Virus record (IMG/VR): IMGVR_UViG_3300018424_000006
Location: 1-64,000 of that record
Strand: one strand, 5' to 3'
Length of the DNA: 64,000 nucleotides
Both the position numbers and the translations under genes were made by a program. Within the stretch, counting starts at the first letter, position 1; each line of letters begins with the position of its first letter. Positions 25,782 to 40,600 of this stretch are shown one piece after another. The notes below the pieces were generated by a model. The model was not told the DNA's origin and ran no database searches. It was given only the letters and a program-made list of their open reading frames with translations.

Positions 25782-25824
25782 CCTATCCCTAGACTTCGCG
25801 TCTAGGGATAGGTAAGTGTGCCGT
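25782..25824. terminator. Terminator-like hairpin with TGCCGT tail between convergent genes
   Basis: 13-bp stem CCTATCCCTAGAC/GTCTAGGGATAGG. Confidence 0.75.
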
Positions 25825-27068
25825 TAGTTGTCGTTTGGCGCATAGATGTCCAATGAGAAGGCCCCGTCTAGCTTTTCAGGATCTAGAGGTTTAGCGGCAC
25901 TTGTACGAATATTACCAGTTAGTTCTCCAGACTCTTTAGCGATGAGTTCTAACTTACGGTTATCAGTAGTGCCAATTATTACTTCGTCAGGACGCTCTTC
26001 TATGATGGTGTAGTTTAACAAACGACCATCTTCACGGAATACTAATCCGTTAGGGCGACGATAGAAAGAATAGCGACGGTTTAGCCCGGTGGAATAAACA
26101 TGCTCTTTCTTGAAGCAGGTATCGTAACGATCGAAAGAGATAATAAAACTATCCCCTTGACTAAGTAGACGCTTAGCATCGAACGTATGGATATCAATTG
26201 CATCTGGATTCATGATAGTGTCAATATAAGGACTGCGGTCAGAAGTCGGACGCTTAAAGATATTATCAATTTCAACTGAATGACGAATAGGTAAGAAAAC
26301 AGTGTTCTCAGTTAACTTACGAGTATCATACCCTGGCTGCTTAAACATACCCGCCACAACTACCATATAAGTTTTATTAGCTAGGTTGTCATCTACCTTA
26401 ACACCGCACTCTGTTAAGTAGCTACGATCTGTCTCTACTGTACGTAAACGAACTTTAATGTTTTCTTCAGTAATACGGTTGATAGTTACATTACCCATCT
26501 GACTAAAGTCTACTACTGAAATAACGCCACCTGTAGGGTTCTGTAGTTTCTTGGCCGCGCCAATAATAAATAGTCGACCATTGATTAGCATAGTTGCATG
26601 GATAATACCATCTACCACGAACAAACAATTCTTGTATAAATTAGTCGTGCTATGTGGATCTGAAATACTTAATTCGTTTTCGATTACGATATCAGTCTTA
26701 TGGTGCTTGGGCACTACCTTATCTTTACCGTAGTTTGCATTTCCAATATAGACGTCAACTTCATAGTCCCAAAGATCACGCATAGTTACCATATCGACAC
26801 TATTTAGAAAAGTACGGTTACTGACTACTAGGTCGGCATACTCGATAGAGCTGATATAGTCTTGCACAGTAACTGTTTTATCAACTATAGCGTTAAAGGC
26901 ATCTAGGTTCTGGGAGCTGCGGTATTCAATGAGCGGGGTATCATTTGCTTCTGTCGCAACAATACGAAACTCTTCATAATTGGCTAGGATATCTTCGATT
27001 GTTTCTTGACGGATATCTTTACCGTCCCAATTTCCATTCGATTTTACGATTGAACTGATAAAAATCAT
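25824..27068 (-). CDS. Putative virion structural protein (phiKZ-like core gene adjacent to RNase H)
   Basis: 414 aa; 'LYKNCLFVVDG..H' and 'VVDFS.MG' motifs; context. Confidence 0.55.
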   Translation of the reverse strand: MIFISSIVKSNGNWDGKDIRQETIEDILANYEEFRIVATEANDTPLIEYRSSQNLDAFNAIVDKTVTVQDYISSIEYADLVVSNRTFLNSVDMVTMRDLWDYEVDVYIGNANYGKDKVVPKHHKTDIVIENELSISDPHSTTNLYKNCLFVVDGIIHATMLINGRLFIIGAAKKLQNPTGGVISVVDFSQMGNVTINRITEENIKVRLRTVETDRSYLTECGVKVDDNLANKTYMVVVAGMFKQPGYDTRKLTENTVFLPIRHSVEIDNIFKRPTSDRSPYIDTIMNPDAIDIHTFDAKRLLSQGDSFIISFDRYDTCFKKEHVYSTGLNRRYSFYRRPNGLVFREDGRLLNYTIIEERPDEVIIGTTDNRKLELIAKESGELTGNIRTSAAKPLDPEKLDGAFSLDIYAPNDN

Positions 27069-27201: not shown

Positions 27202-28197
27202 ATGCCATATAACTTTGATCCGGTTGGAGATAATATTGATAATTTTGTCTCCAACGAAGAGAAAACTATCTCAAGTATTAACGGGACGGCCGTTAACTAC
27301 TTCTTTTTAGACGCTGCTCCGTTCTATGCAGACAGTGTCGTTGTTGTCGATAAAGCTACAGGGAATGCTTTAGATCCTAAAACGGACTTTACCTTTGGTC
27401 ATGAATACGTATATGGCTCAGCTCAAATAGGTAAAAGTATCTGGGGTTCTGTAGTACTCACTGATCCAAACCGTAGTGGTACTTATAGTATCTCTTACCG
27501 TACGGTAGGCGGCGAATTTGTTAATGATGCTAACCTACTGTTAGTAGATGGTCTGGGTATTCTATCTGACCTTCAAAATATTAAATGGGAAGAGGTCGCT
27601 AATATCCCTAGTGAATTCCCGCCTACTCCTCACAATCACCCTGCAAGCGGGTTAGACGGCCTTTCAGAGGTACTTGGTAAGTTAACTGAGATTTCTAACT
27701 TATTAGAATCCTCTACAACTCAGATTCAGTTTGCAGATGTGGTTGATTTAGATATCAACTTTGTTAATCCGTTGATTGCTAATCTAAGTTCCATTGCTTC
27801 TAAAATAGAAGCAATTGCCGTTGGGAATTCTCATTACTATAAAGAGTATTCTACAATCGGTGCTTATAAAGAAATCGCTACTCCTGTTTTAGGTAACTGG
27901 AATCCTACTGATGTTAGAATTGATATTGATGTAGATGGCACTTTCTTATTAATGGTTAGCGAGTATTTGATTCCTACATGGACAAGTTCAGAAGGTAAGT
28001 TGCAATATCGTTGGACTTTAAATGGCCAGCCTCTACAAGTCTCTTACAGCCGAACTGCAATTGTAGCAGCTAAAGCAGGCCAGTACTTACGCCTTGAAGT
28101 TCGTACAACCGTCGCTAATGCGGATAAGATCGTTTATTCAGATTCTTTCCAATCTAGCTCTATAACTGCCCTACGTGTAGCTAACTTTGGAGGTTAA
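27202..28197 (+). CDS. Virion structural protein, phiKZ-like fibre/baseplate adaptor family (paralog A)
   Basis: 'YNFDPVG...N.V.NE..T...APFY.DS...YRTVGG..WEEV.N.P..FPP.PH.H'. Confidence 0.7.
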   Translation: MPYNFDPVGDNIDNFVSNEEKTISSINGTAVNYFFLDAAPFYADSVVVVDKATGNALDPKTDFTFGHEYVYGSAQIGKSIWGSVVLTDPNRSGTYSISYRTVGGEFVNDANLLLVDGLGILSDLQNIKWEEVANIPSEFPPTPHNHPASGLDGLSEVLGKLTEISNLLESSTTQIQFADVVDLDINFVNPLIANLSSIASKIEAIAVGNSHYYKEYSTIGAYKEIATPVLGNWNPTDVRIDIDVDGTFLLMVSEYLIPTWTSSEGKLQYRWTLNGQPLQVSYSRTAIVAAKAGQYLRLEVRTTVANADKIVYSDSFQSSSITALRVANFGG

Positions 28198-28199
28198 TC

Positions 28200-28778
28200 A
28201 TGGCAGCTTCAGATTATACTTTCGACCCTAGTGGCGTAGCGCCAGAAAACCTAGTGGAAAACGAAGCCCATACGCTAACAGACCGTGGCATCTTTCCATT
28301 AGCAAATGCTTTCTTTCGCGATGGATTAGAAGTAGAAGGTTATTCTAATTCTACTTGGACTCCACTGGAAGCTAACAAACATTATACATTCTCTCCTTTA
28401 TATGTAGAGATGGCAGCTGCAACAGGTAAAGAAATATTTACTTACTTGGTATTCAGTGGTGAAATGGCAACTTATAGCCGTGTACGTTTGAAGTATCAGG
28501 CAGTAGGTCAGTACTATGACCGTAGTCTTTTAAACCATGTGGCTTCTACTTCTTTCGATAGAAACAGTATAAGTGCTTGGTTGAACATTAAGAATATCTT
28601 TACCGCACCTATTTCTGTTCGTGACCACGAATTCCATAATAAACAAATTATGGAAGTGATTAACGGACAGTTGGCTAATATTTCAGCTGCTTTGACCAAT
28701 CTAAGTAGTGGTGGTACAAGTAACTTTCTTGAGCGACTACAAGATCTGGATCAGCGCCTACAGCAGCTTGAACCTTAA
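28200..28778 (+). CDS. Virion structural protein, same family (paralog B)
   Basis: 'YTFDPSG..PENLVENEAHTL...TGKE...YQAVG'. Confidence 0.7.
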   Translation: MAASDYTFDPSGVAPENLVENEAHTLTDRGIFPLANAFFRDGLEVEGYSNSTWTPLEANKHYTFSPLYVEMAAATGKEIFTYLVFSGEMATYSRVRLKYQAVGQYYDRSLLNHVASTSFDRNSISAWLNIKNIFTAPISVRDHEFHNKQIMEVINGQLANISAALTNLSSGGTSNFLERLQDLDQRLQQLEP

Positions 28779-28794
28779 TTAATAGGAGTCACTA

Positions 28795-30780
28795 ATGACC
28801 GCAGAAGCTATTAATCAAGAGATTGATCTTCTTGAACAAGTCTTGAATGGATTGGCCGACCGCGCTAATGCAGCCAAGTCAACAGTAGATACTGGCGGTA
28901 GTGCAGGTCCTTATGATGAGGCTTATTTGAATGCGGCTATCTCAACGATAGATACAAACATTACGAATAAGACTCAGGATTTAGCAAACTATCGTCTAAC
29001 CGAAATCCAGCAGTATTTATTTACTACTCTTAAGTTCTTTGATCTTTACAGTATTGTACCGACTACTCCGGGTGGCTTTACAACGTATACCGTTCCAGCG
29101 GACTCAGAAGGCATTATTAAACTTAATGCAGCTACCGAGACTAGATTAATTCTAGAAACGCCTGTAGAGAGCGCTAGAGTGTTTGTGGTTTACTTTGGTG
29201 AGTACATTGCTTCTTCATTTAATTTGATGATACAAGAGGCGGATGGTACAACTAACCGTGCAACCATCAGTATGCACAATAACAGTACTGTAGCCATTAT
29301 CATTGTAGGGACTGACGGTTCAATTCAGCATACTGGAGCCCGCACTTCTATCTTTGGTAAAGCCTTGCCGTTTTTCCATGATCAACTTATAGAAGACGAC
29401 GTTACCGATAAACCAAATATAGGTAGTAAGACACGCTCTATTGTGATTGGAGATAGTAGTCAGAGAACCGACTATCAACGTAACGAACTATTCGGCACAA
29501 TCGCTGCTGATAGTGCAACTTATAACCCGCAAGGAAGTGCGACATTTGCAGCCGCTGACCATTATACTCTTATTTCAGATATCTTGGCAAATGCCGATAA
29601 AGACTTAGGTTTAATTGTTGGTAATCAGTACGGTACTTACGACACCCTTTCGCCTGAGTATGAATTAATCTCTACAATAGAATGTGATCGTTCAGAAACC
29701 ATGCTTTCCTATAAGAAAGATGGGAAGGAATATGTGATTACCGGCGGTGCTCAATTTGGTATACCTTCTCCAGTAGAACAAAGCACTCGAATTAATTTAT
29801 TCGAACATCAAACTGACGGAAGTTTATCTCTAGCAGATTCCCATCCAAGCTATGGTACGGGAGCATTGATGTTAGTAGTTCAAGATGGTCTATTGCGCCT
29901 AATTGAATTCGAGCATCGAGTAGGCACTTCCCTTGATGCTCCTGTTCGAGTGTTTAATGTTAATACGACTATTAATAAACTTGAGTTGGTAAGTAGCTCC
30001 AGTGTAGCCTATGGCTCCAAGGGAGCTGAACACTTCACTTATAATGGCGTTAACTATTTCTTCTCATGGCCTTACGATTCTTCTTTAGGCTCTAGTCTTT
30101 ATCAGTTGGATTCTAACGGTATTCTGTTGCGAATTACTTTACCGCAAGAAATTGAAGATCTGACAGATATAAAGGTATTAGAATACACTTCTGAAGGCCT
30201 TCCTGTTATTTTTGGTGTGACTAGTACCGAAGTAGTTCAGAGTTTTGTTGGCGAGCCTGATGCGAGTCAGGGCATTACGTTCAATACAACTCCAAGACTT
30301 ACATTCCAGCCGGGTGTGGGGGACGTTCCTGCTGACCAGACTAGCGAGCAGTTTATTAGTTTCAGAGGCTCTGATGGTGATGGAGTAGTTCTATCTTCTC
30401 CGATAGCTAAAACAGACCCTCCTCCAGTAACTGCTAAGAATGTTATGGTTCATACCTTCGGTTCCGTAAGTATCACCGAAGTCACTACCACTCTAGGTAC
30501 GTATTCGGTTATCCGTCCATTTACGGCAGATGGGTATACCTACTTAGCGTGTCTAGAAACAGGGCCTGGTGGTAAACTTGAGATTGTACGTCATATCTCA
30601 GGAGCAACTTTCGAGAAGCTATTGACTATAGACCTTTCAAACCCAGTGGATGTAAGCTATAGCTATTCTAACTTCTCTCATCTCCTTAACGTTGTTACAG
30701 GTACGGGTACTCAAGTATCCACGTATGAATTTAGAACCGATAAGCGTATGCTTAACTGGATTCGTACAAGTATCCTTTAA
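28795..30780 (+). CDS. Putative tail fibre/appendage protein with EAR/EPTP-like beta-propeller (triplet 1a)
   Basis: N-terminal coiled coil; repeats such as 'SKGAEHFTYNGVNYFF..SSLYQL' and 'IRPFTADGYTYLACL'. Confidence 0.55.
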   Translation: MTAEAINQEIDLLEQVLNGLADRANAAKSTVDTGGSAGPYDEAYLNAAISTIDTNITNKTQDLANYRLTEIQQYLFTTLKFFDLYSIVPTTPGGFTTYTVPADSEGIIKLNAATETRLILETPVESARVFVVYFGEYIASSFNLMIQEADGTTNRATISMHNNSTVAIIIVGTDGSIQHTGARTSIFGKALPFFHDQLIEDDVTDKPNIGSKTRSIVIGDSSQRTDYQRNELFGTIAADSATYNPQGSATFAAADHYTLISDILANADKDLGLIVGNQYGTYDTLSPEYELISTIECDRSETMLSYKKDGKEYVITGGAQFGIPSPVEQSTRINLFEHQTDGSLSLADSHPSYGTGALMLVVQDGLLRLIEFEHRVGTSLDAPVRVFNVNTTINKLELVSSSSVAYGSKGAEHFTYNGVNYFFSWPYDSSLGSSLYQLDSNGILLRITLPQEIEDLTDIKVLEYTSEGLPVIFGVTSTEVVQSFVGEPDASQGITFNTTPRLTFQPGVGDVPADQTSEQFISFRGSDGDGVVLSSPIAKTDPPPVTAKNVMVHTFGSVSITEVTTTLGTYSVIRPFTADGYTYLACLETGPGGKLEIVRHISGATFEKLLTIDLSNPVDVSYSYSNFSHLLNVVTGTGTQVSTYEFRTDKRMLNWIRTSIL

Positions 30781-30797
30781 AAGAAAAGGAAAAGAAA

Positions 30798-32984
30798 ATG
30801 AGTGATATTTTACTCGAAAAAATGCAGCAGTATGTGGACGAAGTTTCTTTGTCCCTTACTTCTCTAGATGAAAGGATGAGTAGCCTTACAGGTGAACATG
30901 TTCTTCCTAACGTACAGGCCGATGAAGCTGTAGCGATGACCGAAGAACTTACCTACGCTCTTGTTCAGAAGCAGATAGAGGTTGGCATCTATGACGCCTT
31001 CATGGAAGGACTGCTTATGAATCCAGAGCCATGGAAAGCAGGCGATCCGGTACCTGTGTATAACGCACCTAATATACCTGTCCTCGATGTAGATACTCGC
31101 CTTGGTCCATGTACTATACATTTTGATTCTGCTCCTGACATGAGCGGGAATGGACATATATGGTTTATTCGTGACGCATTTGGGACCTTTAAAGAGAATC
31201 CTTGTACAATCATTCTTGGCCCTAAGAAAGCAGGTGCTGTTATAGATGGTACATGGGATCTCTTTGGTCCAGGTGACGAAGGTACACTTGCCCGCTATAC
31301 CCTAGAAAAGAATGATTTAATTACCGCAGTTTCAGTAGGAGATTTTTATATTCCTACTGAAATAGGTACTCCACGCGCCGCAGTAATAGAGGGGGTAGGA
31401 AATCCGGGGATGGACTACGAGAATAAATATATCTCTAGCCTAGCCGGAATTAATGGCCGTGCTATTAAGCATCCTGATGGCGATCTGACTATCTATGGCC
31501 GTTCTAAGGCAGATGGTATTTTTACAAACTGGCCTACCGATATTGGTAATCGTGAACTTTCTTCCTTTATAGTAAGTTCTGGTGGCATCGATAATGTGAC
31601 TAATATCATCGATCCTACTACCCGCTCAGGTAAGAATCGTTGGACTGTAACTACGGACTTTGATCTTCCGTATGTAAATACCGAACCGTATTCAGCCGAC
31701 CGTATGACAATCAATCTACAGAATGACTATAAGATAGAAGTAGATGCTCGTAAAGTTTCTGCTTTAGGCGATATGTCTTATGTTGGTATGAATGTTTACA
31801 ATACGAACGGTACGCGTGTTCATAGTACTCCGTTTATTACCATACCGGGTACTCCGGGAGCTAACTTACCTAACACTAGTGCAACTGGTGACCGCATTAA
31901 GATTATTGGTGTTTATCCAACTATCATTAATGACCCTAGTTACCCGGGTGCGGTATATAAGTTTAAGATTGTCATTTTCTGTGAAGTAGAAGACACGGAT
32001 ACCGGCCGAACGGACATTAATCTTATTCATGGTGAATTAGAAATCGAACATGTTTCAGTTCCTGCTAGTTCGTATAGTTGGGTAATTACTGACCCTGCTC
32101 AATCTTTAATTACGCTACGTTCAGATGACTTAAGTGCTATTAAGCCTTATATCACTAATACACTACAGAGCGATGCAGGCGTTGAATTTAGTATCGTCGA
32201 TAACTCTGGAGCCGATCCTGTCATTGATAGTTGGGTTTATAACTTTAGTACTGGGACATTCTTCCAGTCCGCTGGAGCCTACGGTTCAATTACAGTGACT
32301 GGCCTAGCCGGCGAGATTTCGCAAAGTTCTTTAGCTAGCTGGCATGCCGGTTATAACCATTACTTTGTCCATGAAACTTCTCATGCTGCATTGGTTATCA
32401 ACGACAACGGTACTCTGAAATATCTGCGCCGTAGATATACTACCACTGCATCCGAGGATACTGCGGTAGAGCACGGAATTGATGCAACTTTATTTGACAT
32501 CAATACGGGCCTGGAGCTTACATCCATACTAAAGGATGGCGCTAAGAGTCCGGGCGTTCTAGAAATAGATACTGGGTTTGTTTCTTACCACTATCTAAAT
32601 GGAGTTAAGGCTACGATCAGTCTAGCTGATATTTATGATGCAGATGTTATTCATGGCAATCTCAATGATTACCTATTTATCCTAACTAGAGATACGTTGT
32701 CTAATGAGCGTTTGTTCATCTATATGCTTCCGGATTATAACCCGGGTGCAGCTGGCGACATAACTCCTCTTTTACTGGATAGATTAATTGTTCCTAAAGA
32801 CAGTGCTCTGCAGAAGCCTAGTTTGCTGAACGGAACTGAAGGTAATAACGGTAATATTTTTGGACCGGACCTTTCCGATACTCTGGTAGGACAAAACATC
32901 ATTGTCGAATCTGACAGTCGGGAATTTAATTACCGTGCACACTTCTCTAGAAAAATAGGAGATACCGATGGCATTGCAATATAG
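30798..32984 (+). CDS. Putative tail fibre/appendage protein (triplet 1b)
   Basis: N-terminal coiled coil; T4 gp9/gp10-like module 'VDT..GP.TI....AP...IRDA.GTF..NP.TI'; beta-rich C-terminus. Confidence 0.55.
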   Translation: MSDILLEKMQQYVDEVSLSLTSLDERMSSLTGEHVLPNVQADEAVAMTEELTYALVQKQIEVGIYDAFMEGLLMNPEPWKAGDPVPVYNAPNIPVLDVDTRLGPCTIHFDSAPDMSGNGHIWFIRDAFGTFKENPCTIILGPKKAGAVIDGTWDLFGPGDEGTLARYTLEKNDLITAVSVGDFYIPTEIGTPRAAVIEGVGNPGMDYENKYISSLAGINGRAIKHPDGDLTIYGRSKADGIFTNWPTDIGNRELSSFIVSSGGIDNVTNIIDPTTRSGKNRWTVTTDFDLPYVNTEPYSADRMTINLQNDYKIEVDARKVSALGDMSYVGMNVYNTNGTRVHSTPFITIPGTPGANLPNTSATGDRIKIIGVYPTIINDPSYPGAVYKFKIVIFCEVEDTDTGRTDINLIHGELEIEHVSVPASSYSWVITDPAQSLITLRSDDLSAIKPYITNTLQSDAGVEFSIVDNSGADPVIDSWVYNFSTGTFFQSAGAYGSITVTGLAGEISQSSLASWHAGYNHYFVHETSHAALVINDNGTLKYLRRRYTTTASEDTAVEHGIDATLFDINTGLELTSILKDGAKSPGVLEIDTGFVSYHYLNGVKATISLADIYDADVIHGNLNDYLFILTRDTLSNERLFIYMLPDYNPGAAGDITPLLLDRLIVPKDSALQKPSLLNGTEGNNGNIFGPDLSDTLVGQNIIVESDSREFNYRAHFSRKIGDTDGIAI

Positions 32985-34959
32985 TGATCTATTTAAACGA
33001 GTTACGGACCTAAGTACTCTTGCTCACGCTAAGCTTCGAGAAGCATTTGAGATTCTAGAAGGCCTTGACCCTAACTCTGTTGCTAACCGCCCATTGGTTG
33101 TTGAGATAAAGAATCGGGTAGCGCTACTGGAGTCTTTACTCAGTGACATCAAAGAAGAATACGTAATTCGAAGAAGTATGTTCATTCTTCCTGAGTTAAT
33201 GACCGAAGGTGCTTCAGAGAACCAAACTGCTTTCTCCAATATGCGCTATACGGTTACCAATGCGATCAATAACGTTTTCTTGCCGCTGGCTCCGCAAGAA
33301 GGTGATGTGGTTGGTTTTGTACTGGAACTAGGTACTTCAGAATCCACTATCCGCATTCGCGGTGAACAGTTAGATGAAACAATCACTCTATCTGCCGATC
33401 GTTCTCAGGGCTGCCATTTCACATATAGCGGAACTAAGTGGTTATTTGTACCGTCTAACTTTGATATCAAAGAAAGGCCGGAGACAGGTAAGAATGCTAA
33501 GGGTCGATATAGAAAAACCGGAAGTAAGATTGAACAGATGCTAGAAGTGCGTTTGGGAGAGACTGGTGACTGGCCTATGCCGTGGCCTGACGACTACCAG
33601 ATCGTTAGTAGCATTGTGAGTCGCCAGCCTCGTAATACTGCCAATGAACGTGGGTTTGTTATCTATCCGGATAAGACCCGGATATATCTTCCTGATATTG
33701 TCGGCGGTGACAACGAACCTACTGGTAACGTTAATGGCTCCTGTACGTTCTTGCACGACAACAAGCTTGCCTTTGTAGCTACTGCTACTGACACAGTCCT
33801 AAATGTTAATACGGATGCCGGCTTGGTGCCCGCTACTGAGATTGGCTTGAATCTATATAAGGTGGACTCTGATGGCACCTTGGATAAGCTGACTCTGGCT
33901 GGCTATAGCGGCAAAGGACTTAGCTTTTCTAGCGACGTAAGCTATAATGGCAATAATTTGTTCCTAATGGAATCTGGGTATGATCCTTTGAATCCTGGGT
34001 CTAAAACCCCTTCGTTCCTTAAGTTCTTTACTTTACAATTGGAAACGAGTGAGGGAGGACCTATTGGAAGTGGTACTGTCCATAGTATTTCTACAGCTAC
34101 TTCATACGGTGATCGTCTCGAGACTGTTCGCTATAATGGAGGAGAGGCGGGGACATTAATTGCCATTACGGCTAATCCTTCTAAATACTCTCAAGCTATA
34201 TCCGTCAATGATCAATGCCAAATCTTTAAGTTGGTAGACGGCAACCTTATTGCAAATGAAGTAATCAAAGTTAATAATAGTGAAAACTATAGTTATACTG
34301 ATGTAACTACATTTACTCGCGGAGACTTCGTTTATTTTGTATTCTCTAACGATACAGATCAGATGCTTAAGGTAGAACGTTTCACTATATCCACTGCTTC
34401 CCATAGCGGCTCGTACTTGTTACAGATGGATGGTAGTAAGACGGGCGGCATTAAGAAACTTGAAATGGTACCTCTCCATGACGAATATTATCTAATTGGT
34501 CTTGGCGATACTGGATATGAAAACAGCAGCATTATTCGCTTTACATTTGATATTAGCGGCGTACCTTCAATTGGTCCCGTAACGATTAATACTCAGGCAG
34601 ATATTGCAGTTGAAGATGTGGATGGTATCCATTACTTCTTCCAAGGCGAAACGCCTTACTTAACCTATGTATCGAAAGAGCGCGGGGTTAAGATTGGTAA
34701 GATTACTGGTACTGGAGATTCTCTAAATATCTTCTTTGGTGAAGAGTACTATTATCCATATGCTAGCGACGTAAAAAGCTTTGTGCATAACGGAACTCGT
34801 ATGCTCTTCATTGACTATGATGCTTCTACTATTATTGGTGGCGTTACTGACTATCGTGAAGGTAAGAGTGATCTTGCTATCTTCCAAGATAAGTTAGGTA
34901 AGTTAGACGCTCTTGTTACTGGTATTCGTTATGATACTACCGGTGTAGTTCCACGTTAA
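32968..34959 (+). CDS. Putative tail fibre/appendage protein with EAR/EPTP-like beta-propeller (triplet 1c)
   Basis: Coiled coil, 'LP.AP.EGD.V...FTY.G..W' module, repeats 'TDVTTFTRGDFVYFVFSN' and 'SDVKSFVHNGTRMLFI'. Confidence 0.6.
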   Translation: MALQYSDLFKRVTDLSTLAHAKLREAFEILEGLDPNSVANRPLVVEIKNRVALLESLLSDIKEEYVIRRSMFILPELMTEGASENQTAFSNMRYTVTNAINNVFLPLAPQEGDVVGFVLELGTSESTIRIRGEQLDETITLSADRSQGCHFTYSGTKWLFVPSNFDIKERPETGKNAKGRYRKTGSKIEQMLEVRLGETGDWPMPWPDDYQIVSSIVSRQPRNTANERGFVIYPDKTRIYLPDIVGGDNEPTGNVNGSCTFLHDNKLAFVATATDTVLNVNTDAGLVPATEIGLNLYKVDSDGTLDKLTLAGYSGKGLSFSSDVSYNGNNLFLMESGYDPLNPGSKTPSFLKFFTLQLETSEGGPIGSGTVHSISTATSYGDRLETVRYNGGEAGTLIAITANPSKYSQAISVNDQCQIFKLVDGNLIANEVIKVNNSENYSYTDVTTFTRGDFVYFVFSNDTDQMLKVERFTISTASHSGSYLLQMDGSKTGGIKKLEMVPLHDEYYLIGLGDTGYENSSIIRFTFDISGVPSIGPVTINTQADIAVEDVDGIHYFFQGETPYLTYVSKERGVKIGKITGTGDSLNIFFGEEYYYPYASDVKSFVHNGTRMLFIDYDASTIIGGVTDYREGKSDLAIFQDKLGKLDALVTGIRYDTTGVVPR

Positions 34960-34975
34960 GGTTTGGTGAAAACAA

Positions 34976-35569
34976 ATGTATTATTTTGATGAAAATGGCA
35001 AACAGCTTATTTTAGGAGAACATATTACTTCTCCTGAACAGGCTGCTTATGCGACAGACGACAGAAACTCTTTGGTATTCAAAAGTGTACCGAAGAACAA
35101 AGCCATTAAAATTGTTAATGGCGAACCCACGTATGTAGATGTAGTAGTAGATCGTGCAGGTCTATTAGCCTATAACAAAGAACGGCGTGATGGCCGTATC
35201 CGTTCCGGCATTAGTGTAACTGCTACTTTCTATGTAAACGAAGAACTTAAGACTTCGCATACTGAAACAGTCCGTATTACGGATCGCTTAAAAAGTGATG
35301 TAGAGTCTATTGTAGTTCTGTTTAAGAACTGTCCTAGCTTTACTGGTCCTGCTTCATTACAAGTAGCGGATGATATCTACTTAGTTATCTCTAATGCTAC
35401 TGAAGCAGAGAAGCTTTTCGTAGCGGGTAGTGAACATATCTTCCTTTGTTATGTTAAAGAACGTGAAGGTAAAGCTATGATCAAGACTGCCAGTGAAGCA
35501 GACTTCGTTCAAGTTAATCGTGATCTACGTCAGCATTGGACTCAGTTCGAGACAAACGTAACGTTGTAA
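34976..35569 (+). CDS. Tail fibre assembly/chaperone-like protein (DUF4376/Tfa-like)
   Basis: 'K.I.IVNGEP.YVD......L....ERRD.RI..GI.V' pattern; directly follows the fibre genes. Confidence 0.55.
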   Translation: MYYFDENGKQLILGEHITSPEQAAYATDDRNSLVFKSVPKNKAIKIVNGEPTYVDVVVDRAGLLAYNKERRDGRIRSGISVTATFYVNEELKTSHTETVRITDRLKSDVESIVVLFKNCPSFTGPASLQVADDIYLVISNATEAEKLFVAGSEHIFLCYVKEREGKAMIKTASEADFVQVNRDLRQHWTQFETNVTL

Positions 35570-35613
35570 TTTACGGGGTGTTAATCACCCCCTCTTACTA
35601 GAGGGAATTAAAC

Positions 35614-36429
35614 ATGAGTAAGCCTCGCTTATCATACGACAAAACTGGCATTAACCCTCAGAACCGTATACCGAACGAACTGCATGACGTTGCTCTAGGC
35701 GGCCCTCGAATCATAATACTTAATGAAGGTAGTTACTATCTTGATTCTGTTGAGATTCGTGCGGGTAGTACCAGCGCGCCACTAATTAAAGGAACTGATT
35801 GGGAAATGACCCGACTGGATCTTGATGTTAGTGCAGATACCGGTAAGGAAGTTGGTTTCGGCATCTCGATTACCAACCCTACTTATCAAGGTGATACGCT
35901 CGTTACTTATCAAGCAGTAGGCGGGTATGAGGGGAAGGGACTGGGCTTCTATGAGGAATTAGCCAAGCTAATTACTGCTATTGGCACTGGACCTATCAGC
36001 TGGGAACGAATTAACCACCCCAGTACCTTTACTCCTGAAGAGCATACTCACTCAGTTAAGCAATTAACTGAATTGGAAGCTGTCTCTAATGCGTTAGACG
36101 GCTTGCGCGATGCGTTTCAGAAATCCCATTCATTGGGCATTACTGGTAACGCATTGGAAGGTAAGTCCAATCGCATACTGGCGTTGATAGCGTCATTACG
36201 TTCGGATATCAATAAGATTGCTTCCGGAGTAGTTGCTTCAGTAAGCGATGAGGATATCGGTAAGATTGATACGGATCTGGTAAACTTAGCCGCCCTTAAC
36301 GCAGATATGATGTTAAGGATGCTGTATTTTGAACAAGAGCAAGCAGAGATTAAAGACATTCTAAGTCGACTAATGACTCAGCTTTCTGAAATGTTCCAGA
36401 ATACTTCTGATACTATTAGTGTCAATTAA
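35614..36429 (+). CDS. Virion structural protein, adaptor family (paralog C)
   Basis: 'YDKTG.NP.N.I.NE.H...TGKEV...YQAVGG...WE.I..P..F.P..H.H'; C-terminal coiled coil. Confidence 0.7.
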   Translation: MSKPRLSYDKTGINPQNRIPNELHDVALGGPRIIILNEGSYYLDSVEIRAGSTSAPLIKGTDWEMTRLDLDVSADTGKEVGFGISITNPTYQGDTLVTYQAVGGYEGKGLGFYEELAKLITAIGTGPISWERINHPSTFTPEEHTHSVKQLTELEAVSNALDGLRDAFQKSHSLGITGNALEGKSNRILALIASLRSDINKIASGVVASVSDEDIGKIDTDLVNLAALNADMMLRMLYFEQEQAEIKDILSRLMTQLSEMFQNTSDTISVN

Positions 36430-36462
36430 TACCTAATACAAAAGTACTTCATGCTTTCTTCT

Positions 36463-36503
36463 GATTGTCTAGATACCTTAACGGGTATCTAGACAGTCTT
36501 TTT
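36463..36503 (+). terminator. Intrinsic terminator
   Basis: GATTGTCTAGATACC/GGTATCTAGACAGTC stem plus T5. Confidence 0.8.
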
Positions 36504-36522
36504 ATGCTTGGAGGTATTGACA

Positions 36523-37542
36523 ATGAAAACGCTAATGGATACAAGACTAACTAATCTGCTTCATAAGGCGAATATGTCGTTGACGAAAACAGCCAGTAGC
36601 ATCAATGAAGTAGACGACGATACTGATAGTAACCAGCTATCTATTCAGGATGCCGTAGTTAGAATCTTGGCCATTGAAGCTATATTAAATGGTGAGGCAG
36701 GAGACCTACCATTTATCCATTCGTCTAAGATTACGAATGACCTTACTGTACCTACTGCCCCAGCTACAGATACTGTAGCAGGCGCTACTGAAGTATGGGA
36801 GATGCGTAAGAAGCTTTATGAGCTCCTAGATGCTTTAGCTAACTTTGATGGTAATGCCGACCCCAATGATTATCTTACTAACCTTAATCAGGTTATGGCA
36901 TGGGCAAATGCTAACACAGACACTCTAGCCGCAATGGAGCCTGCTACTCCTACAGCAGCAGGTTTTATGTCAGCCCTGCAGGCCGGTAAACTAGCCAGTA
37001 TACAAGAAGAAGCAAATAAGACAGTAGTTACTACCGATATCAACTCTACGTCTGGCACAGAAGCAGCTGCCGCTTCTATAACCAACCAACTAAAGACAAT
37101 GATAGAGCAACAGGCTCTTAGTCAGGTAACAGCTGGGGAAATAGATAACCCGACCGCAATCACTGATGCTAGGAAGTTCTCACCTAATGACATTCTAGAT
37201 ATCATCAAGAAGCATGCAGTAACTCTTTTAGATGCCTCTAAGTTTGAGCGCACTATCTATATTCCGGGTGAAGTATTGGTGCAGGAATTTGGCACTAAAC
37301 TAAGTGTACCTGATGGAGATTGGAATGGTAAGGTACATACGTCTTCTTCTAACTCTTCTGGTACAACTATTGTTAAGTTGACCCATACAGATGCTACTGA
37401 AGTAACATTAACTCATTCGGTAATAGCTCAAGAGATTTCGAATGTAACGCTTAAGGGCGGGACATGGACTATAGCAGTAACTCAAGCAAATCCAGTTATT
37501 GCTCAAGACCTTACTTTACTTTTCAGTCTAATAAAGCAATAA
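36523..37542 (+). CDS. Short fibre protein with shared N-terminal anchor domain
   Basis: Start ATG 36523 after GGAGG; first ~190 aa align with the 41814 and 47182 proteins; fibre motif 'ATPTAAGFMSALQAGKL'. Confidence 0.75.
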   Translation: MKTLMDTRLTNLLHKANMSLTKTASSINEVDDDTDSNQLSIQDAVVRILAIEAILNGEAGDLPFIHSSKITNDLTVPTAPATDTVAGATEVWEMRKKLYELLDALANFDGNADPNDYLTNLNQVMAWANANTDTLAAMEPATPTAAGFMSALQAGKLASIQEEANKTVVTTDINSTSGTEAAAASITNQLKTMIEQQALSQVTAGEIDNPTAITDARKFSPNDILDIIKKHAVTLLDASKFERTIYIPGEVLVQEFGTKLSVPDGDWNGKVHTSSSNSSGTTIVKLTHTDATEVTLTHSVIAQEISNVTLKGGTWTIAVTQANPVIAQDLTLLFSLIKQ

Positions 37543-37555
37543 TAAGGAGTCTAGT

Positions 37556-38545
37556 ATGTACTATAGACTTAAACCTAACTTTACGGTAGGGAGTCTGGGA
37601 GGCTCTATTGGTACCGATATAGCAAAATGCTTATGCAATGAAGTTTCTGATGTTGATAGCTCTGCCCTTGAAAAGTTCACATTAATTGATTATCGAAATG
37701 ATATTCCCGGTGGATGGACTAGCCGATCTGGCTCTACAATTAGTAAGGCTGACCCTTATAGCGGCGAAACTATAACACTTACTAATGCGACTGGTGGTAA
37801 TGAAGGTAGTTTCACAGAAACTAAGTTTCAACTTGCATGGAACGGAACTACCACTACTATCTCCTTAAAGTCCGTTGGCGCGCCACTTAACAATTTTTAT
37901 GAAGCAATTGGAACCGGAGATGTTATTCATATTTACATGGATAAGTGGTGTACTATAGTAGTCCCGACTAAGGCCAGTTTTGAAATGTCAACTGGAAATG
38001 GATTTATTCTCCTACATGGAGATGCCTTCTTTGAAAACGATGATTTAAGTACAGCGTACTCGTTGGCCTTTATAGGCATAAATGGCAATGGCTATGGACC
38101 CTCTAGTGGTACTAAAGGGCCAATACTAGACCTATCCACCGGAACCATATCATTTTCAAAAATAAGTTCTCCCGTACAGCTTTATACAGCAGGCACTAAG
38201 ATCCAAGCTTTAGAGGAATCTGACATAGAGTATTTCTTTTCAGATCCCAATATAGTTATGGGGCTTGACATTTCGTATTGTGCCACTCCAGGGGCGGGAG
38301 TTGAGTCAGGCGGTGTCCAGAGAGTCTGGCCCTTAGAGTCTCCTGTATTCTTCCAGCCTGGAAAAAGTAGCTTTGGAAGTTCTGGCACAGTTGCTACCTA
38401 TAATGGAATCGAATACCTAGCCTTAGGTTATCAGGCAAGTCCATCGCAGCCTGAAGAGGGAGTTAGAGTAGAGATTCCACTAAATACGGATGACCCAGAC
38501 ATAATTAGACCTAAGTTCACTTTTATCCATATCCCTTTTGCATAA
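37556..38545 (+). CDS. Putative fibre-tip/receptor-binding protein (triplet 2a)
   Basis: Starts MYYRLKP; internal 'IYMDKW.TIVVP'; ends FIHIPFA. Confidence 0.55.
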   Translation: MYYRLKPNFTVGSLGGSIGTDIAKCLCNEVSDVDSSALEKFTLIDYRNDIPGGWTSRSGSTISKADPYSGETITLTNATGGNEGSFTETKFQLAWNGTTTTISLKSVGAPLNNFYEAIGTGDVIHIYMDKWCTIVVPTKASFEMSTGNGFILLHGDAFFENDDLSTAYSLAFIGINGNGYGPSSGTKGPILDLSTGTISFSKISSPVQLYTAGTKIQALEESDIEYFFSDPNIVMGLDISYCATPGAGVESGGVQRVWPLESPVFFQPGKSSFGSSGTVATYNGIEYLALGYQASPSQPEEGVRVEIPLNTDDPDIIRPKFTFIHIPFA

Positions 38546-38557
38546 GGAGACAAAGCA

Positions 38558-39619
38558 ATGTTCTTTAAGTTTAGGGTCAATCCTAGCACCCCATTAAATA
38601 CCTTTGGCTCTCTAGTTCCAGATTTTATAAAGGCATTTAGTGGAGAAACTGACCCGAGTGCATTCGACAATATTACGTTGTTGGAAGCTACCGGTAAAAT
38701 ATTCCCGGATAATTGGGAATATAAACTGGAAGGTAGGACATTTAGTATTTACGGGAAAGATCCTAATAACCCGCAAGGCTTGGATTGTAAAACTGGTATT
38801 ACTATAGATCTAGGTATCAACGATGCCGATTTTAAAGGCAACTACGATATAAACCGTTTTGATAACGCCGGCAATATTATCAAGACTCACATGAGCTATA
38901 ACCTTCAAGGGAATACAAATTTTAATGCCCAGGCATTAGCTCTCGCCAACGTTTATGCAGACTATTGTTTCTATATAGATGAAGAGACCTTTGTATTCCT
39001 TCCTTTAGAGTGGACCAATACCAGTCTTACAACTACTACTTATTTTTGGGGAAGAAATGCCGGGTTCTTTATGGGATTCTCTAGTCCATTTAACCCTTCT
39101 GCAGATTATAGTCAGTCGACTGGTTTCTTTCTTCAGTCAATAACTGGGGATGTTTATGCGCCATCCATAGGTTTTATTGATGATTATCCCGTTTATAAAG
39201 ACCATCCATATTCATCAAAGAGGTTTAATCCGGGAGGGAGCTTTACTAGATTTTATTGGAGGTCTTCTGTAGATAGATTTATGGCTCTTAATGCCGATGT
39301 AACTTCTTTGGAAGCTATAGTTAGGCATCCGTCTGATAACAGACTAGCGAACGCTTGGTTTGTTAATAGCTATCGGAGCGGTATAAATAACACGAATACT
39401 CCATCTAACTGCTACGTATGGAAGGGTAAGCGAGTTAAGAAATGGATGAGGTTTGTTCCGGCAAACGCTCTTAGGAGAAAGGTGCAAATGGATGGCAAGA
39501 AAGGTTACCTCATGGCGCTACCTATCGCAGAGCTACCCACTAATGGGTCAGTGGCGACAACAATATCTGAATATTATTTAGATAAAACAATTATTATTTT
39601 TATGCCTATAGAGGCGTGA
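38558..39619 (+). CDS. Putative fibre-tip/receptor-binding protein (triplet 2b)
   Basis: Starts MFFKFR; internal 'FYIDEETFVFLP'; ends IFMPIEA. Confidence 0.55.
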   Translation: MFFKFRVNPSTPLNTFGSLVPDFIKAFSGETDPSAFDNITLLEATGKIFPDNWEYKLEGRTFSIYGKDPNNPQGLDCKTGITIDLGINDADFKGNYDINRFDNAGNIIKTHMSYNLQGNTNFNAQALALANVYADYCFYIDEETFVFLPLEWTNTSLTTTTYFWGRNAGFFMGFSSPFNPSADYSQSTGFFLQSITGDVYAPSIGFIDDYPVYKDHPYSSKRFNPGGSFTRFYWRSSVDRFMALNADVTSLEAIVRHPSDNRLANAWFVNSYRSGINNTNTPSNCYVWKGKRVKKWMRFVPANALRRKVQMDGKKGYLMALPIAELPTNGSVATTISEYYLDKTIIIFMPIEA

Positions 39620-39631
39620 GGAAATAGAATT

Positions 39632-40600
39632 ATGTTTATGCATCTAAAGCCGAAAACTACGGCAAATATATATCCCCATCAAGCAGTGCAAGATATCTTT
39701 GATATCGTAGAAGGTGAGACTTTATCTGAAAATTTAACGTACTATAACATTGAAACTCTAGATAGCCGTTATAGTACTACAACATGGAAACGTATTATCG
39801 ATGGATCTTACATCCATATCATTTCCCCTGATCCGGATGATCCAGCCGGCAAATGGGGCGGGTTCTCCCTATTGACTACTACCAACGGAAGGATGTTTAG
39901 CTGTCTATCTGATGACGGGGTGACTGCCACTTCAGGATCGTCTTTTATTACAATTGCAGGTAATGCCAGTTATTGCCAGTTTAACGACACAACGGCAACT
40001 GAACTATTTGTCTATATGGACGAGCAGACTTTATTAATTATACCTACAGACGCATCCTACTTTACAGGTAGTAATCCAGGCTTGTGGGCCACTCATTCAA
40101 AGCGGCTGGCATCGGATGACCTACCTGCTAACTACAGTACCGTTAGTACTACATATTCGGTAGTAACAACTACCACTTCTTCCGCTAATCCAAGAAGTAT
40201 TTGTTGTAGCGTGCCCGGGTTTGGTAGCTATAAAACACACGTCAATGAGCAAGCCGTCTTTAGATACAACGGCAAAACAGTAGCAACTCAATCTTCAGTA
40301 ATGACAAATGCTCCGGGCACTGCAGATAACATGGTCGTTGGTGGACTTTACCTCGGTAGTGACACAACTGGATCGCTCCCGGTTTACAGAACTCTTAGGG
40401 ATGATAGTCAGCTTCTTATCCAGCCAGTAACTGCATCTGGCGCATACGTCGGCCAGACTTTACTGATAGGTCCTTCTGGTAGTGAGAAAGAATATATCTG
40501 CCTTGGGTTCTCTATGTCAACAAGTAATAGCTCAGCGGCTACCACTTCTATACTGGCGTCAAGGAGTGGTCTACTCTTTATGTATTTACCTAAGGGGTAG
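39632..40600 (+). CDS. Putative fibre-tip/receptor-binding protein (triplet 2c)
   Basis: Starts MFMHLKP; internal 'VYMDEQTLLIIP'; ends FMYLPKG. Confidence 0.55.
   Translation: MFMHLKPKTTANIYPHQAVQDIFDIVEGETLSENLTYYNIETLDSRYSTTTWKRIIDGSYIHIISPDPDDPAGKWGGFSLLTTTNGRMFSCLSDDGVTATSGSSFITIAGNASYCQFNDTTATELFVYMDEQTLLIIPTDASYFTGSNPGLWATHSKRLASDDLPANYSTVSTTYSVVTTTTSSANPRSICCSVPGFGSYKTHVNEQAVFRYNGKTVATQSSVMTNAPGTADNMVVGGLYLGSDTTGSLPVYRTLRDDSQLLIQPVTASGAYVGQTLLIGPSGSEKEYICLGFSMSTSNSSAATTSILASRSGLLFMYLPKG

What the first reader, a model, noticed from the sequence alone, without database searches (positions are those of the whole stretch)
28795..35569. Triplet of fibre-like paralogs with EAR/EPTP (epitempin)-like propellers plus one chaperone: a heterotrimer?
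Three adjacent 661-728-aa genes share one layout: N-terminal coiled coil, gp9/gp10-like module, beta-propeller. Repeats such as SKGAEHFTYNGVNYFF..SSLYQL, TDVTTFTRGDFVYFVFSN and SDVKSFVHNGTRMLFI fit the EAR consensus (A.DWE.F...G..FL.VAN...S.IY.W), best known from animal LGI1/TSPEAR/ADGRV1. One Tfa-like chaperone follows all three. Inference: a heterotrimeric, three-specificity receptor-binding head rather than the usual homotrimer.
Basis: partly seen in the sequence, partly recalled or inferred. Interest (0 to 1): 0.62.

Follow-up and report, generated by a model that had tools for sequence, protein, structure and literature searches.

The report
Three-subunit propeller tail-fibre module, jumbo phage
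Three neighbouring genes of a phiKZ-like jumbo phage encode three different, always co-inherited subunits of one host-recognition fibre, at least two of them ending in seven-bladed propellers that most resemble the animal LGI1 EPTP domain. Whether they form one mixed trimer is plausible but unproven.

Summary
The genes are real: 661, 728 and 663 aa, plus a 197-aa gene. They lie in the tail-fibre operon of a complete 219.8-kb phiKZ-like phage, syntenic with phiKZ gp130-gp135 and flanked by three genes with the gp131-like N-terminal anchor domain.

They are not detectable paralogs. They define three separate, unannotated families (A, B, C). Only the A and C propellers are remotely alike (hhalign E=5e-6).

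In six other metagenomic phage loci the order A-B-C-197aa-anchor is kept. In two of them the whole triplet is duplicated as a unit, with still only one 197-aa gene.

AF2 gives C a helical hairpin, a beta-sandwich and a seven-bladed propeller. The best PDB match is LGI1 EPTP (Z 22.5-22.9; next 20.2-20.7). The Pfam EPTP model does not match, so this is fold likeness, not family membership. B also has the hairpin and a sub-threshold T4 gp9/gp10-like motif; its head is poorly modelled.

Complex prediction for the three N-terminal modules gave weak support (0.43; best control 0.01).

A three-subunit fibre complex is well supported. A strict 1:1:1 heterotrimer is one of several possible stoichiometries. 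The "Tfa-like chaperone" rests on position, size and one weak DUF4376 hit.

The parts
25824..27068 (-). Divergently transcribed virion structural gene (414 aa). It sits where phiKZ gp130, the fibre-docking protein, sits.
   Evidence: phrog_3337, E=5e-31. Same position and strand as phiKZ gp130 next to gp131. Ortholog in L014, 28% identity, E=1e-50.
27202..28197 (+). Anchor 1 (331 aa): gp131-like N-terminal domain protein.
   Evidence: phrog_2163, E=2e-38. BLASTP against phiKZ gp131 residues 9-164, E=2e-19. Orthologs in Vibrio phages BONAISHI and pir03 at 29% identity.
28200..28778 (+). Anchor 2 (192 aa): little more than the gp131-like N-terminal domain.
   Evidence: phrog_2163, E=2e-15. Matches gp133 and gp131 at E about 1e-5. 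This type is present twice (662 and 422 aa) in L012, the locus with two triplets.
28795..30780 (+). Subunit A (P0001, 661 aa): N-terminal helical region (inferred), beta-rich middle module, C-terminal propeller from about residue 290 to 655.
   Evidence: Family of 7 (alignment A2). ESM Atlas model: residues 282-652 match 7-bladed lactonase and EPTP clusters, TM by row 0.60-0.78. Propeller profile matches that of C, E=5e-6.
30798..32984 (+). Subunit B (P0002, 728 aa): helical hairpin 4-73, conserved module to about residue 265 with a gp9/gp10-like motif at about 95-141, poorly modelled beta-rich C-terminal head.
   Evidence: Family of 8 (alignment A3). AF2 pLDDT 43. T4_gp9_10_N in one member, E=0.008. 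hhalign against T4 gp10 residues 67-112, E=0.0015, prob 17%. VIA top 50 are all propellers over residues 450-710, Z 8-10.
32968..34959 (+). Subunit C (P0003, 663 aa): helical hairpin 2-76, beta-sandwich 78-250, seven-bladed propeller 240-654. Overlaps gene B by 17 nt.
   Evidence: AF2 pLDDT 69. Blades listed. LGI1 EPTP is the best PDB match. Family of 11 or more (alignment A1).
34976..35569 (+). 197-aa gene (P0004), conserved immediately after the last C gene: probable fibre-assembly chaperone.
   Evidence: Orthologs of 197-203 aa directly after C in 7 related contigs, 27-37% identity in the six with DNA. One copy only where the triplet is doubled. DUF4376 E=0.0027, below the cut-off.
35614..36429 (+). 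Anchor 3 (271 aa): gp131-like N-terminal domain protein that closes the operon.
   Evidence: phrog_2163, E=2e-29. Matches gp134 at E=2e-9. Orthologs at 30-41% identity in the same position in five related loci with a 267-278-aa form, in L009 as a 528-aa form, and in BONAISHI.
36463..36498 (+). Terminator-like hairpin (16-bp stem followed by a T run) that ends the seven-gene unit.
   Evidence: It is the only long-stem site in 25.5-41.9 kb. Sequence shown.

Best explanation
Genes A, B and C encode three non-interchangeable subunits of one receptor-binding fibre complex of a phiKZ-like jumbo phage.

The seven-gene unit at 27202-36498 holds anchor 1, anchor 2, A, B, C, a 197-aa gene and anchor 3, and ends in a terminator-like hairpin. 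It is the counterpart of the phiKZ gp131-gp135 fibre cluster. Here the gp131-like baseplate-docking domain sits on three short proteins. The distal heads sit on three separate proteins.

Each head protein starts with a helix-loop-helix of about 75 residues, followed by a conserved beta module. Each ends in a fast-evolving head. In A and C that head is a seven-bladed, EPTP-like beta-propeller. The likely role of the propellers is binding of a host surface structure.

The subunits join through their N-terminal modules. The simplest stoichiometry is 1:1:1, with three hairpins forming a six-helix bundle. That would give one stalk with three different heads. The complex would dock to the baseplate through the anchors. 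The 197-aa protein would help it fold or assemble.

Shown: gene structure, synteny, family separation, co-inheritance, duplication as a unit, and fold of C.

Inferred: physical co-assembly, stoichiometry, receptor binding, and chaperone role.
For: 1. Locus identity. The flanking genes carry the gp131-like N-terminal domain. The arrangement mirrors phiKZ gp130-gp135. In phiKZ the fibre base is modelled as a hetero-hexamer of gp131-like N-termini with a six-helix bundle, and a seven-bladed propeller sits at the distal end (PMC13250141).

2. Conserved module. A-B-C-197aa-anchor is found in L014, L011, L015, L012 and L010. L009 has C-197aa-anchor. L012 and L010 have the order (A)BC-ABC with a single 197-aa gene.

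3. Co-inheritance. The A, B, C and 197-aa trees share the clades (L014, L015), (L012, L010) and (window, L011[, L009]). First and second copies of B group across L012 and L010, so both complete triplets were kept after one old duplication.

4. Concerted N-terminal length. In the window and L011 the N-terminal region is about 6-10 residues shorter in B (invariant Asp at 83-84 against 88-92) and in C (invariant Arg at 90-93 against 99-103). It is probably also shorter in A.

5. The same N-terminal hairpin in B and C.

6. Complex prediction for A 1-290, B 1-270 and C 1-250: weak support, score 0.43 (runs 0.33, 0.43, 0.50) against a best control of 0.01. The tool's mark was reached by 58 of 80 solved complexes and 2 of 110 mismatched pairs. 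At 0.60 or under it was reached by only 7 of those 80 and by both mismatches that passed. The runs agree in at least 26% of contacts, and the partner's pLDDT is at least 66. My own alignments were used, so these counts hold only roughly.

7. One transcription unit. The genes are tightly packed or overlapping, and one strong terminator-like hairpin follows anchor 3.

8. Typical receptor-binding-protein pattern. In B and C the middle module is more conserved (24-26% mean pairwise identity) than the C-terminal head (16%).
Against: - No experiment and no homotrimer-versus-heterotrimer prediction is available.
- The complex score is in the band where a pass is 'more often wrong than right unless the guess was likely beforehand'.
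- Known phage fibres and the T4 gp9/gp10 family are homotrimers (established knowledge).
- Conserved order and duplication as a unit are equally expected for a branched or serial assembly of homotrimers.
- The length covariation may be a single evolutionary event.
- The duplication is a single event.
- The head of B is not reliably modelled.
- No homology links A, B and C in the N-terminal module, apart from a 30-column motif between B and C at E=0.018.
Confidence: 0.5

Rival explanations
1. Branched complex of homotrimers. A3, B3 and C3 are each ordinary homotrimers. B, through a T4 gp10-like adaptor module, carries A and C as side branches. This is the arrangement of the tailspike trees of phages CBA120 and G7C, where gp10-like domains bind the N-termini of the other spikes.
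For: - B carries the only gp9/gp10-like signal: PF07880 in one member at residues 103-169 (E=0.008) and T4 gp10 residues 67-112 by hhalign (E=0.0015).
- The same B-profile segment hits twice in tandem in BONAISHI ORF298c, as gp10-like domains do.
- Conserved order, duplication as a unit and a predicted contact between the N-terminal modules all fit this model equally well.
- Homotrimers are the rule for fibres (established knowledge).
Against: - The gp9/gp10 signal is below Pfam's cut-off (16.7 against 25 bits), and the hhalign probability is only 17%.
- All three proteins, not only A and C, start with the same kind of hairpin of matched and co-varying length. That points to a common bundle rather than adaptor-client docking.
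Confidence: 0.3
2. Three independent homotrimeric fibres. Each docks on its own to one of the three gp131-like anchors, giving the phage three alternative receptor specificities with no contact between A, B and C.
For: - The window and L014 have three anchors and three head proteins.
- Multiple independent receptor-binding proteins are common in jumbo phages (established knowledge).
- There is no sequence similarity between the N-termini of A, B and C.
Against: - L012 has six head genes but four anchors.
- Independent fibres should be gained, lost or duplicated singly. Only whole triplets are seen, always in the order A-B-C.
- The controls of the complex prediction scored 0.00-0.01 against 0.43.
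- A, B and C lack the gp131-like domain that phiKZ uses for docking.
Confidence: 0.15
3. Serial fibre like the T4 long tail fibre (gp34-gp35-gp36-gp37 plus chaperone gp38). A, B and C would be consecutive segments joined end to end, and only the last would touch the host.
For: The gene order is fixed, and a small conserved gene follows the last member. That is the arrangement in T4 (established knowledge).
Against: - Both A and C end in fast-evolving propellers, which is the mark of distal host-contacting heads rather than of joints.
- All three share the same kind of N-terminus rather than complementary head-to-tail ends.
Confidence: 0.05

Closest known systems
phiKZ tail fibre, gp131 with gp133-gp135 (Sycheva 2012; structural atlas PMC13250141)
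   Same: - Same genomic place, next to the gp130-like gene.
- Fibre built from several different proteins.
- Helical bundle at the base.
- Seven-bladed propeller at the distal end.
- The gp131-like N-terminal domain is present in the operon.
   Different: - In phiKZ, anchor domain and propeller are on one chain (gp131). Here they are on separate proteins.
- A, B and C lack the gp131-like domain.
- There is no sequence likeness to the gp131 propeller, and no phiKZ gp131 structure is among the top 50 structural matches.
- The A-B-C triplet families are absent from phiKZ and from the 50,697 phage records searched.
EPTP/EAR propeller of LGI1 (PDB 5y2z, 5y31, 9kzc); Pfam PF03736
   Same: - Seven-bladed propeller.
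- Best solved structural match to C: Z 22.4-22.9, rmsd 3.2-3.6 A, 293-308 residues aligned.
- Also the top Foldseek hit, E=4e-9.
- EPTP clusters are among the nearest Atlas models for both A and C.
- The blades show the same alternation of an acidic/aromatic first strand and a hydrophobic second strand.
   Different: - About 10% identity.
- The Pfam EPTP model gives no match in the window's genes. It gives only E=0.12-0.24 in one member each of families A and C.
- The margin over unrelated WD40, DDB1 and YncE propellers is only about 2-3 Z units.
- Different partner domains and biology.
T4 gp9/gp10 N-terminal domain (PF07880) and the gp10-like branching adaptors of CBA120 and G7C tailspikes
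   Same: B has helices followed by a module with the motif shared by gp9 and gp10. The motif lies at the matching place of the Pfam profile, positions 77-143 of 175.
   Different: - Sub-threshold: 16.7 bits against a cut-off of 25, in 1 of 8 members.
- No signal in A or C.
- gp9 and gp10 are homotrimers (established knowledge).
Staphylococcus phage phi11 receptor-binding protein Gp45 (PMC4901313, seen in the search list; details from my own knowledge)
   Same: A trimeric stalk of N-terminal helices carrying propeller 'platform' domains that bind a cell-wall glycopolymer.
   Different: Homotrimer of one gene, five-bladed propeller, siphovirus baseplate. Not compared here by any tool.
Tail-fibre chaperone gp27 of Alteromonas phage V22 (DUF4376; PMC7289586, PMC10579305)
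   Same: Size (195 against 197 aa). Gene lies directly after the fibre gene. Weak DUF4376 match over P0004 residues 60-176.
   Different: The match is below the cut-off and is seen in 1 of 7 family members. The family profile against gp27 gives E=0.15.

Membership tests
EPTP/EAR repeat family (Pfam PF03736) | Match to the Pfam EPTP repeat model at or above the gathering score | tested here: not met
   No hit at E<=1 in P0001-P0003. No hit at E<=10 in the whole 219.8-kb genome. Only E=0.24 in 1 of 11 C-family members and E=0.12 in 1 of 7 A-family members.
EPTP/EAR repeat family (Pfam PF03736) | Seven-bladed beta-propeller built from seven repeats of about 45-60 residues | tested here: met
   The AF2 model of C has 28 strands in 7 blades over residues 240-654. 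The Atlas model of A aligns residues 282-652 to 7-bladed propellers. B is uncertain.
EPTP/EAR repeat family (Pfam PF03736) | An EPTP domain is the nearest structure among all solved folds | tested here: met
   LGI1 EPTP ranks first by Foldseek, by VIA on Foldseek's list (Z 22.9; next family 20.2) and by VIA on 48,161 representatives (Z 22.5; next 20.7). The margin is modest.
phiKZ gp131-type fibre protein | gp131-like N-terminal domain (phrog_2163) | tested here: not met
   Absent from A, B and C. Present in the three flanking genes at 27202, 28200 and 35614.
phiKZ gp131-type fibre protein | Encoded in the cluster next to the gp130-like structural gene | tested here: met
   The same layout is found in L014 and L012.
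phiKZ gp131-type fibre protein | C-terminal propeller homologous to that of gp131 | tested here: not met
   hhalign of the A and C profiles against gp131 gives E=0.32-0.35. No phiKZ gp131 structure appears in the top 50 structural matches. The fold class (seven blades) is shared.
T4 gp9/gp10-like N-terminal domain (PF07880) | Match to the Pfam model, or to T4 gp9 or gp10 | tested here: inconclusive
   B family: 1 of 8 members at E=0.008, 16.7 bits against a cut-off of 25. hhalign against gp10 gives E=0.0015, prob 17%, and against gp9 E=0.11. C and A against gp10: no signal.
Tail-fibre assembly chaperone (lambda/Mu Tfa type, or V22 gp27 DUF4376 type) | Sequence match to a chaperone family | tested here: inconclusive
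   No Tfa-type family at E<=1 or, for any of the seven members, at E<=0.1. DUF4376 at E=0.0027 in 1 of 7 members, below the cut-off. No PHROG hit. The family profile against V22 gp27 gives E=0.15.
Tail-fibre assembly chaperone (lambda/Mu Tfa type, or V22 gp27 DUF4376 type) | Small gene directly downstream of the fibre gene, better conserved than the fibre | tested here: met
   A 197-203-aa gene lies directly after the last C gene in all 7 related contigs. Identity is 27-37% in the six with DNA, against 15-25% for A, B and C.
Obligate heteromeric (1:1:1) fibre | The three genes always occur as a complete, ordered set | tested here: met
   5 complete triplets (window, L014, L011, L015 and the second set of L010) plus two in L012 = 7. 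The first L010 set is cut by the contig end. L009 and the P0005 contig are also cut upstream.
Obligate heteromeric (1:1:1) fibre | Direct contact between the three chains | tested here: inconclusive
   Complex prediction gave weak support: 0.43 against a best control of 0.01 (with the caveats quoted in the report).
Obligate heteromeric (1:1:1) fibre | One copy of each chain per stalk, and no homotrimers | not testable with these tools
This needs homo-versus-hetero predictions and experiments.

The most novel reading that the evidence does not exclude
An obligate 1:1:1 heterotrimeric receptor-binding fibre. Three long-diverged chains each give one helical hairpin to a six-helix stalk and carry three different heads, at least two of them EPTP-like propellers. 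One fibre would then read up to three host surface features at once. The whole three-gene cassette would be the unit that duplicates and evolves.
Probability: 0.33. Interest if true: 0.75.

Novelty: new variant of a known kind. Interest (0 to 1): 0.55.

Why it matters
Phage receptor-binding fibres are almost always homotrimers of one gene. Host-range prediction and engineering assume this.

A conserved cassette of three different subunits that is inherited and duplicated only as a set would be a different design rule. This holds whether it forms a mixed trimer or a fixed branched complex.

It would also extend the hetero-oligomeric fibre base recently proposed for phiKZ to the distal, host-binding part.

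The three families have no Pfam or PHROG model, so they are currently annotated as hypothetical in jumbo-phage genomes. Profiles built from alignments A1-A4 would annotate them.

The EPTP-like fold adds a phage example to a propeller type known mainly from animal synaptic and sensory proteins. No evolutionary link is shown.

Tried and rejected
- PHROGs on A, B, C and the 197-aa protein: nothing.
- megablast and tblastn against 50,697 phage records with the locus, A and C: nothing. The 197-aa protein gave only chance hits at E>=2.
- Word search with C: blank. With the 197-aa protein and with B residues 1-270: only the query itself.
- IMG/VR pattern scans. C gave none. A gave one near-identical contig end.
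- Self-comparison of single sequences for internal repeats: not significant.
- PDB sequence searches with single proteins and with the family profiles A1-A4: nothing meaningful.
- 197-aa family against phiKZ gp136, the gene in the equivalent place: no likeness.
- AF2 of B with 8 sequences: pLDDT 43. Only the hairpin and some C-terminal blades are usable.
- BFVD search with the C model: many phage propeller proteins, none close.
- IQ-TREE runs: branches of 1.5-2.5 changes per site and poorly resolved. Only the three major clades are used.
- Idea that BONAISHI ORF297c (2008 aa) is an A+B+C fusion: rejected as shown. It holds propeller segments matching the A and C profiles, but no hairpin or middle modules.
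- The beta-sandwich of C (residues 78-250) could not be searched alone, because fold searches take whole models and the propeller fills the lists. Nothing is claimed about its fold.
- Sequencing-run and read tools were not used. No alternative genetic code was used.
Full report
**1. What is there**

The window is the first 64 kb of a 219,819-bp virus record with direct terminal repeats, rated complete.

Its genes mark it as a phiKZ-like jumbo phage. They include an RNase H, a phrog_3337 structural protein, phrog_2163 'virion structural/tail' proteins, an SbcC-like nuclease, an NAD-dependent ligase, and giant ORFs of 1707 and 2618 aa. The nearest named kin are Vibrio phages BONAISHI and pir03, at about 29% protein identity.

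The finding's ORFs are exactly as described:
- A = 28795-30780, 661 aa
- B = 30798-32984, 728 aa
- C = 32968-34959, 663 aa, overlapping B by 17 nt
- a 197-aa gene at 34976-35569

. A, B and C have Shine-Dalgarno-like sites. Table 11 was used throughout.

**2. The surroundings identify the locus**

Three flanking genes match the N-terminal 150-170 residues of phiKZ gp131, gp133, gp134 and gp135. They are at 27202-28197 (331 aa), 28200-28778 (192 aa) and 35614-36429 (271 aa). The best match is E=2e-19.

Upstream, on the other strand, lies a structural gene in the position of phiKZ gp130. The only strong terminator-like hairpin of the region, with a 16-bp stem, follows the third anchor at 36463-36498.

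So anchor 1, anchor 2, A, B, C, the 197-aa gene and anchor 3 look like one seven-gene unit. It is the counterpart of the phiKZ gp131-gp135 fibre cluster.

The 2026 structural atlas of phiKZ (PMC13250141) describes that fibre as follows. [quoted passage not shown] The seven-bladed propeller of gp131 sits at the distal end. Propeller-tipped fibres with a hetero-oligomeric base are therefore already a known kind in this phage group.

**3. Are the three proteins paralogs?**

Not detectably.
- BLASTP between them finds nothing.
- Pfam and PHROGs find nothing.
- The exhaustive HMMER search with C found 11 relatives of 636-705 aa.
- Fetching their contigs gave six related loci with DNA and one gene list without DNA.
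- All-against-all BLASTP splits the large proteins into three clean families: A with 7 members, B with 8 and C with 9 or more. The 197-aa family and the anchor family are also separate. No cross-family links appear at E<=1e-4.

Profile comparison detects only the A and C propeller regions as related (prob 86%, E=5e-6, out of register as expected for repeats). A against B gives nothing. B against C gives one 30-column motif at E=0.018.

**4. The triplet is a unit**

Gene orders in the related loci (protein lengths in aa):
- L014: RNase H, (-)409, 325, 194, A692, B791, C665, 199, 269. This is the same order as the window.
- L011: A687, B762, C665, 203, 278.
- L015: A689, B781, C665, 199.
- L012 (a 228-kb contig): 327, 662, 422, A687, B827, C656, A702, B803, C676, 197, 274.
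- L010: B816, C661, A682, B761, C666, 200, 271.
- L009: a cut ORF weakly B-like, C636, 199, 528.

.

The order A-B-C is never broken. Where there are more copies, there is a whole second triplet. Only one 197-aa gene follows the last C.

FastTree topologies of A, B, C and the 197-aa family share the same three clades. The first and second copies of B pair across L012 and L010. So one old duplication of the whole cassette was kept intact in two lineages (IQ-TREE was poorly resolved).

The N-terminal region is shorter in the window and L011 in at least two of the three proteins:
- B: invariant Asp at 83-84, against 88-92 elsewhere.
- C: invariant Arg at 90-93, against 99-103 elsewhere.
- A: about 94, against 97-116 elsewhere. 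This is measured on a less certain column.

. This is consistent with a shared bundle, but it may be a single evolutionary event.

**5. Folds**

AF2 of C, with 11 sequences, reached mean pLDDT 69. It gives:
- helices 2-31 and 42-76
- a confident beta-sandwich at 78-250 (pLDDT 80-89)
- 28 strands forming seven four-stranded blades at 240-654

.

Against the PDB, the LGI1 EPTP domain ranks first in three searches:
- Foldseek: E=4e-9.
- VIA-align on Foldseek's list: Z 22.4-22.9, rmsd 3.2-3.6 A, 293-308 residues aligned, about 10% identity. The next family, DDB1 and WD40 proteins, is at 20.2.
- VIA-align on all 48,161 representatives: Z 22.5, with the next at 20.7.

The ESM Atlas's own models of A and C, and my AF2 model searched against the Atlas, also bring up EPTP clusters (bacterial ones and LGI/TSPEAR). 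These appear beside 7-bladed lactonase and haemolysin-type propellers.

At sequence level the EPTP model does not match the window. It appears only at E=0.12-0.24 in one member each of families A and C. The honest statement is this: these are seven-bladed propellers whose nearest solved relative is EPTP, by a modest margin. Family membership is not shown.

No phiKZ gp131 structure is among the top 50 matches, and there is no sequence likeness to gp131.

AF2 of B was poor (pLDDT 43). It still shows the same hairpin (helices 4-31 and 37-73) and some blade-like hairpins at 566-665. All 50 best VIA matches are propellers over residues 450-710, but only at Z 8-10.

B carries a sub-threshold T4 gp9/gp10 signal just after the hairpin. 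PF07880 matches one member at E=0.008. hhalign against T4 gp10 residues 67-112 gives E=0.0015 with prob 17%. A and C against gp10 show nothing.

**6. Do they bind each other?**

One complex job was allowed. I used A 1-290, B 1-270 and C 1-250, each with its family alignment.

The verdict was weak support: score 0.43 (runs 0.33, 0.43, 0.50) against a best of three controls of 0.01. The tool's calibration is as follows. The mark was reached by 58 of 80 solved complexes and 2 of 110 mismatched pairs. At 0.60 or under it was reached by only 7 of those 80 and by both mismatches that passed. The runs agree in at least 26% of contacts, and the partner's pLDDT is at least 66. My own alignments were used, so the counts hold only roughly.

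Given the strong genomic prior, I take this as a modest increase in the odds of contact. It says nothing on stoichiometry.

**7. The 197-aa gene**

It is the best-conserved member of the module, at 27-37% identity. It always lies directly after the last C gene. It is single even where the triplet is doubled.

There is no Tfa-type (Caudo_TAP) match. The only signal is DUF4376 at E=0.0027, which is 18.6 bits against a cut-off of 25, in one of seven members.

DUF4376 is the C-terminal domain of gp27 of Alteromonas phage V22. That protein is 195 aa, is encoded directly after the fibre gene, is required for a functional fibre, and is absent from the final complex (PMC7289586, PMC10579305). The family profile against gp27 itself is not significant (E=0.15).

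A chaperone role is therefore a reasonable inference from place, size and conservation. It is not a demonstrated homology.

**8. Verdict**

The best-supported reading is a three-subunit host-recognition complex, attached through gp131-like anchors. Two of its heads are EPTP-like propellers and the third is uncertain.

A strict 1:1:1 heterotrimer is attractive: three hairpins would give six helices, echoing the phiKZ six-helix bundle. I give it about one chance in three. A branched assembly of homotrimers with B as a gp10-like adaptor is the main rival.

This is a new variant of a known kind. The fibre class and the idea of a mixed fibre base exist in phiKZ. The A-B-C cassette, its behaviour as a unit, and the split between anchor and head proteins are not described in anything I could find.

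Noticed in passing
window 36463-36498: Long perfect hairpin (16-bp stem, 4-nt loop) followed by a T run, directly after the third anchor gene. It is the only strong terminator-like site in 25.5-41.9 kb. The listed TTG start of the next ORF (36508) abuts it, so that gene probably starts further downstream.
   Followed up: partly
window 36508-40600: Four tandem ORFs of 344, 329, 353 and 322 aa with only faint mutual similarity (E 0.01-0.09). Residues 14-201 of the first are 36% identical to the N-terminus of a 1029-aa Peptidase_G2 protein at the same place in L007/L012, and its residues 99-277 are 30% identical to part of a 1156-aa protein in L014. This looks like a second modular fibre or tailspike set with a shared N-terminal adaptor.
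   Followed up: partly
L012:2050-5329 (ENA contig k141_493246): The locus with two A-B-C triplets also has two copies of the anchor-2 type, here extended to 662 and 422 aa. The window and L014 have one triplet and one short anchor 2 (192 and 194 aa). This may be one anchor 2 per triplet, but the sample is very small.
   Followed up: partly
L003:4747-10773 (Vibrio phage BONAISHI ORF297c, 2008 aa) and L003:3262-4728 (ORF298c): BONAISHI has the same frame of anchor 1, anchor 2 ... small gene, anchor 3. Between the anchors lie a 488-aa protein, with two tandem hits to the B-family gp10-like segment, and a 2008-aa protein with several separate stretches matching the A and C propeller profiles. This may be several propellers on one chain.
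   Followed up: partly
window 41814-46937 and 47182-55038: ORFs of 1707 aa (C-terminal 284 residues match phrog_4775, pre-neck appendage protein, E=3e-55) and 2618 aa follow, with four more of 570-1024 aa. G+C rises from about 0.40 to 0.43-0.46 beyond 48 kb. The host-recognition region seems to span more than 35 kb.
   Followed up: no
L002 (IMGVR_UViG_3300023116_000042, contig end): A second IMG/VR contig carries residues 1-324 of protein A at 100% identity and then ends. The phage, or a near-identical one, was therefore assembled at least twice. The protein table lists P0002 and P0004 on 7 contigs.
   Followed up: no
window 32968-32984; L014:7331 and L014:9703-9706: Genes B and C overlap by 17 nt in the window. 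In L014 the A/B and B/C junctions overlap by 1 and 4 nt. This tight packing is compatible with coupled translation of the three subunits.
   Followed up: no
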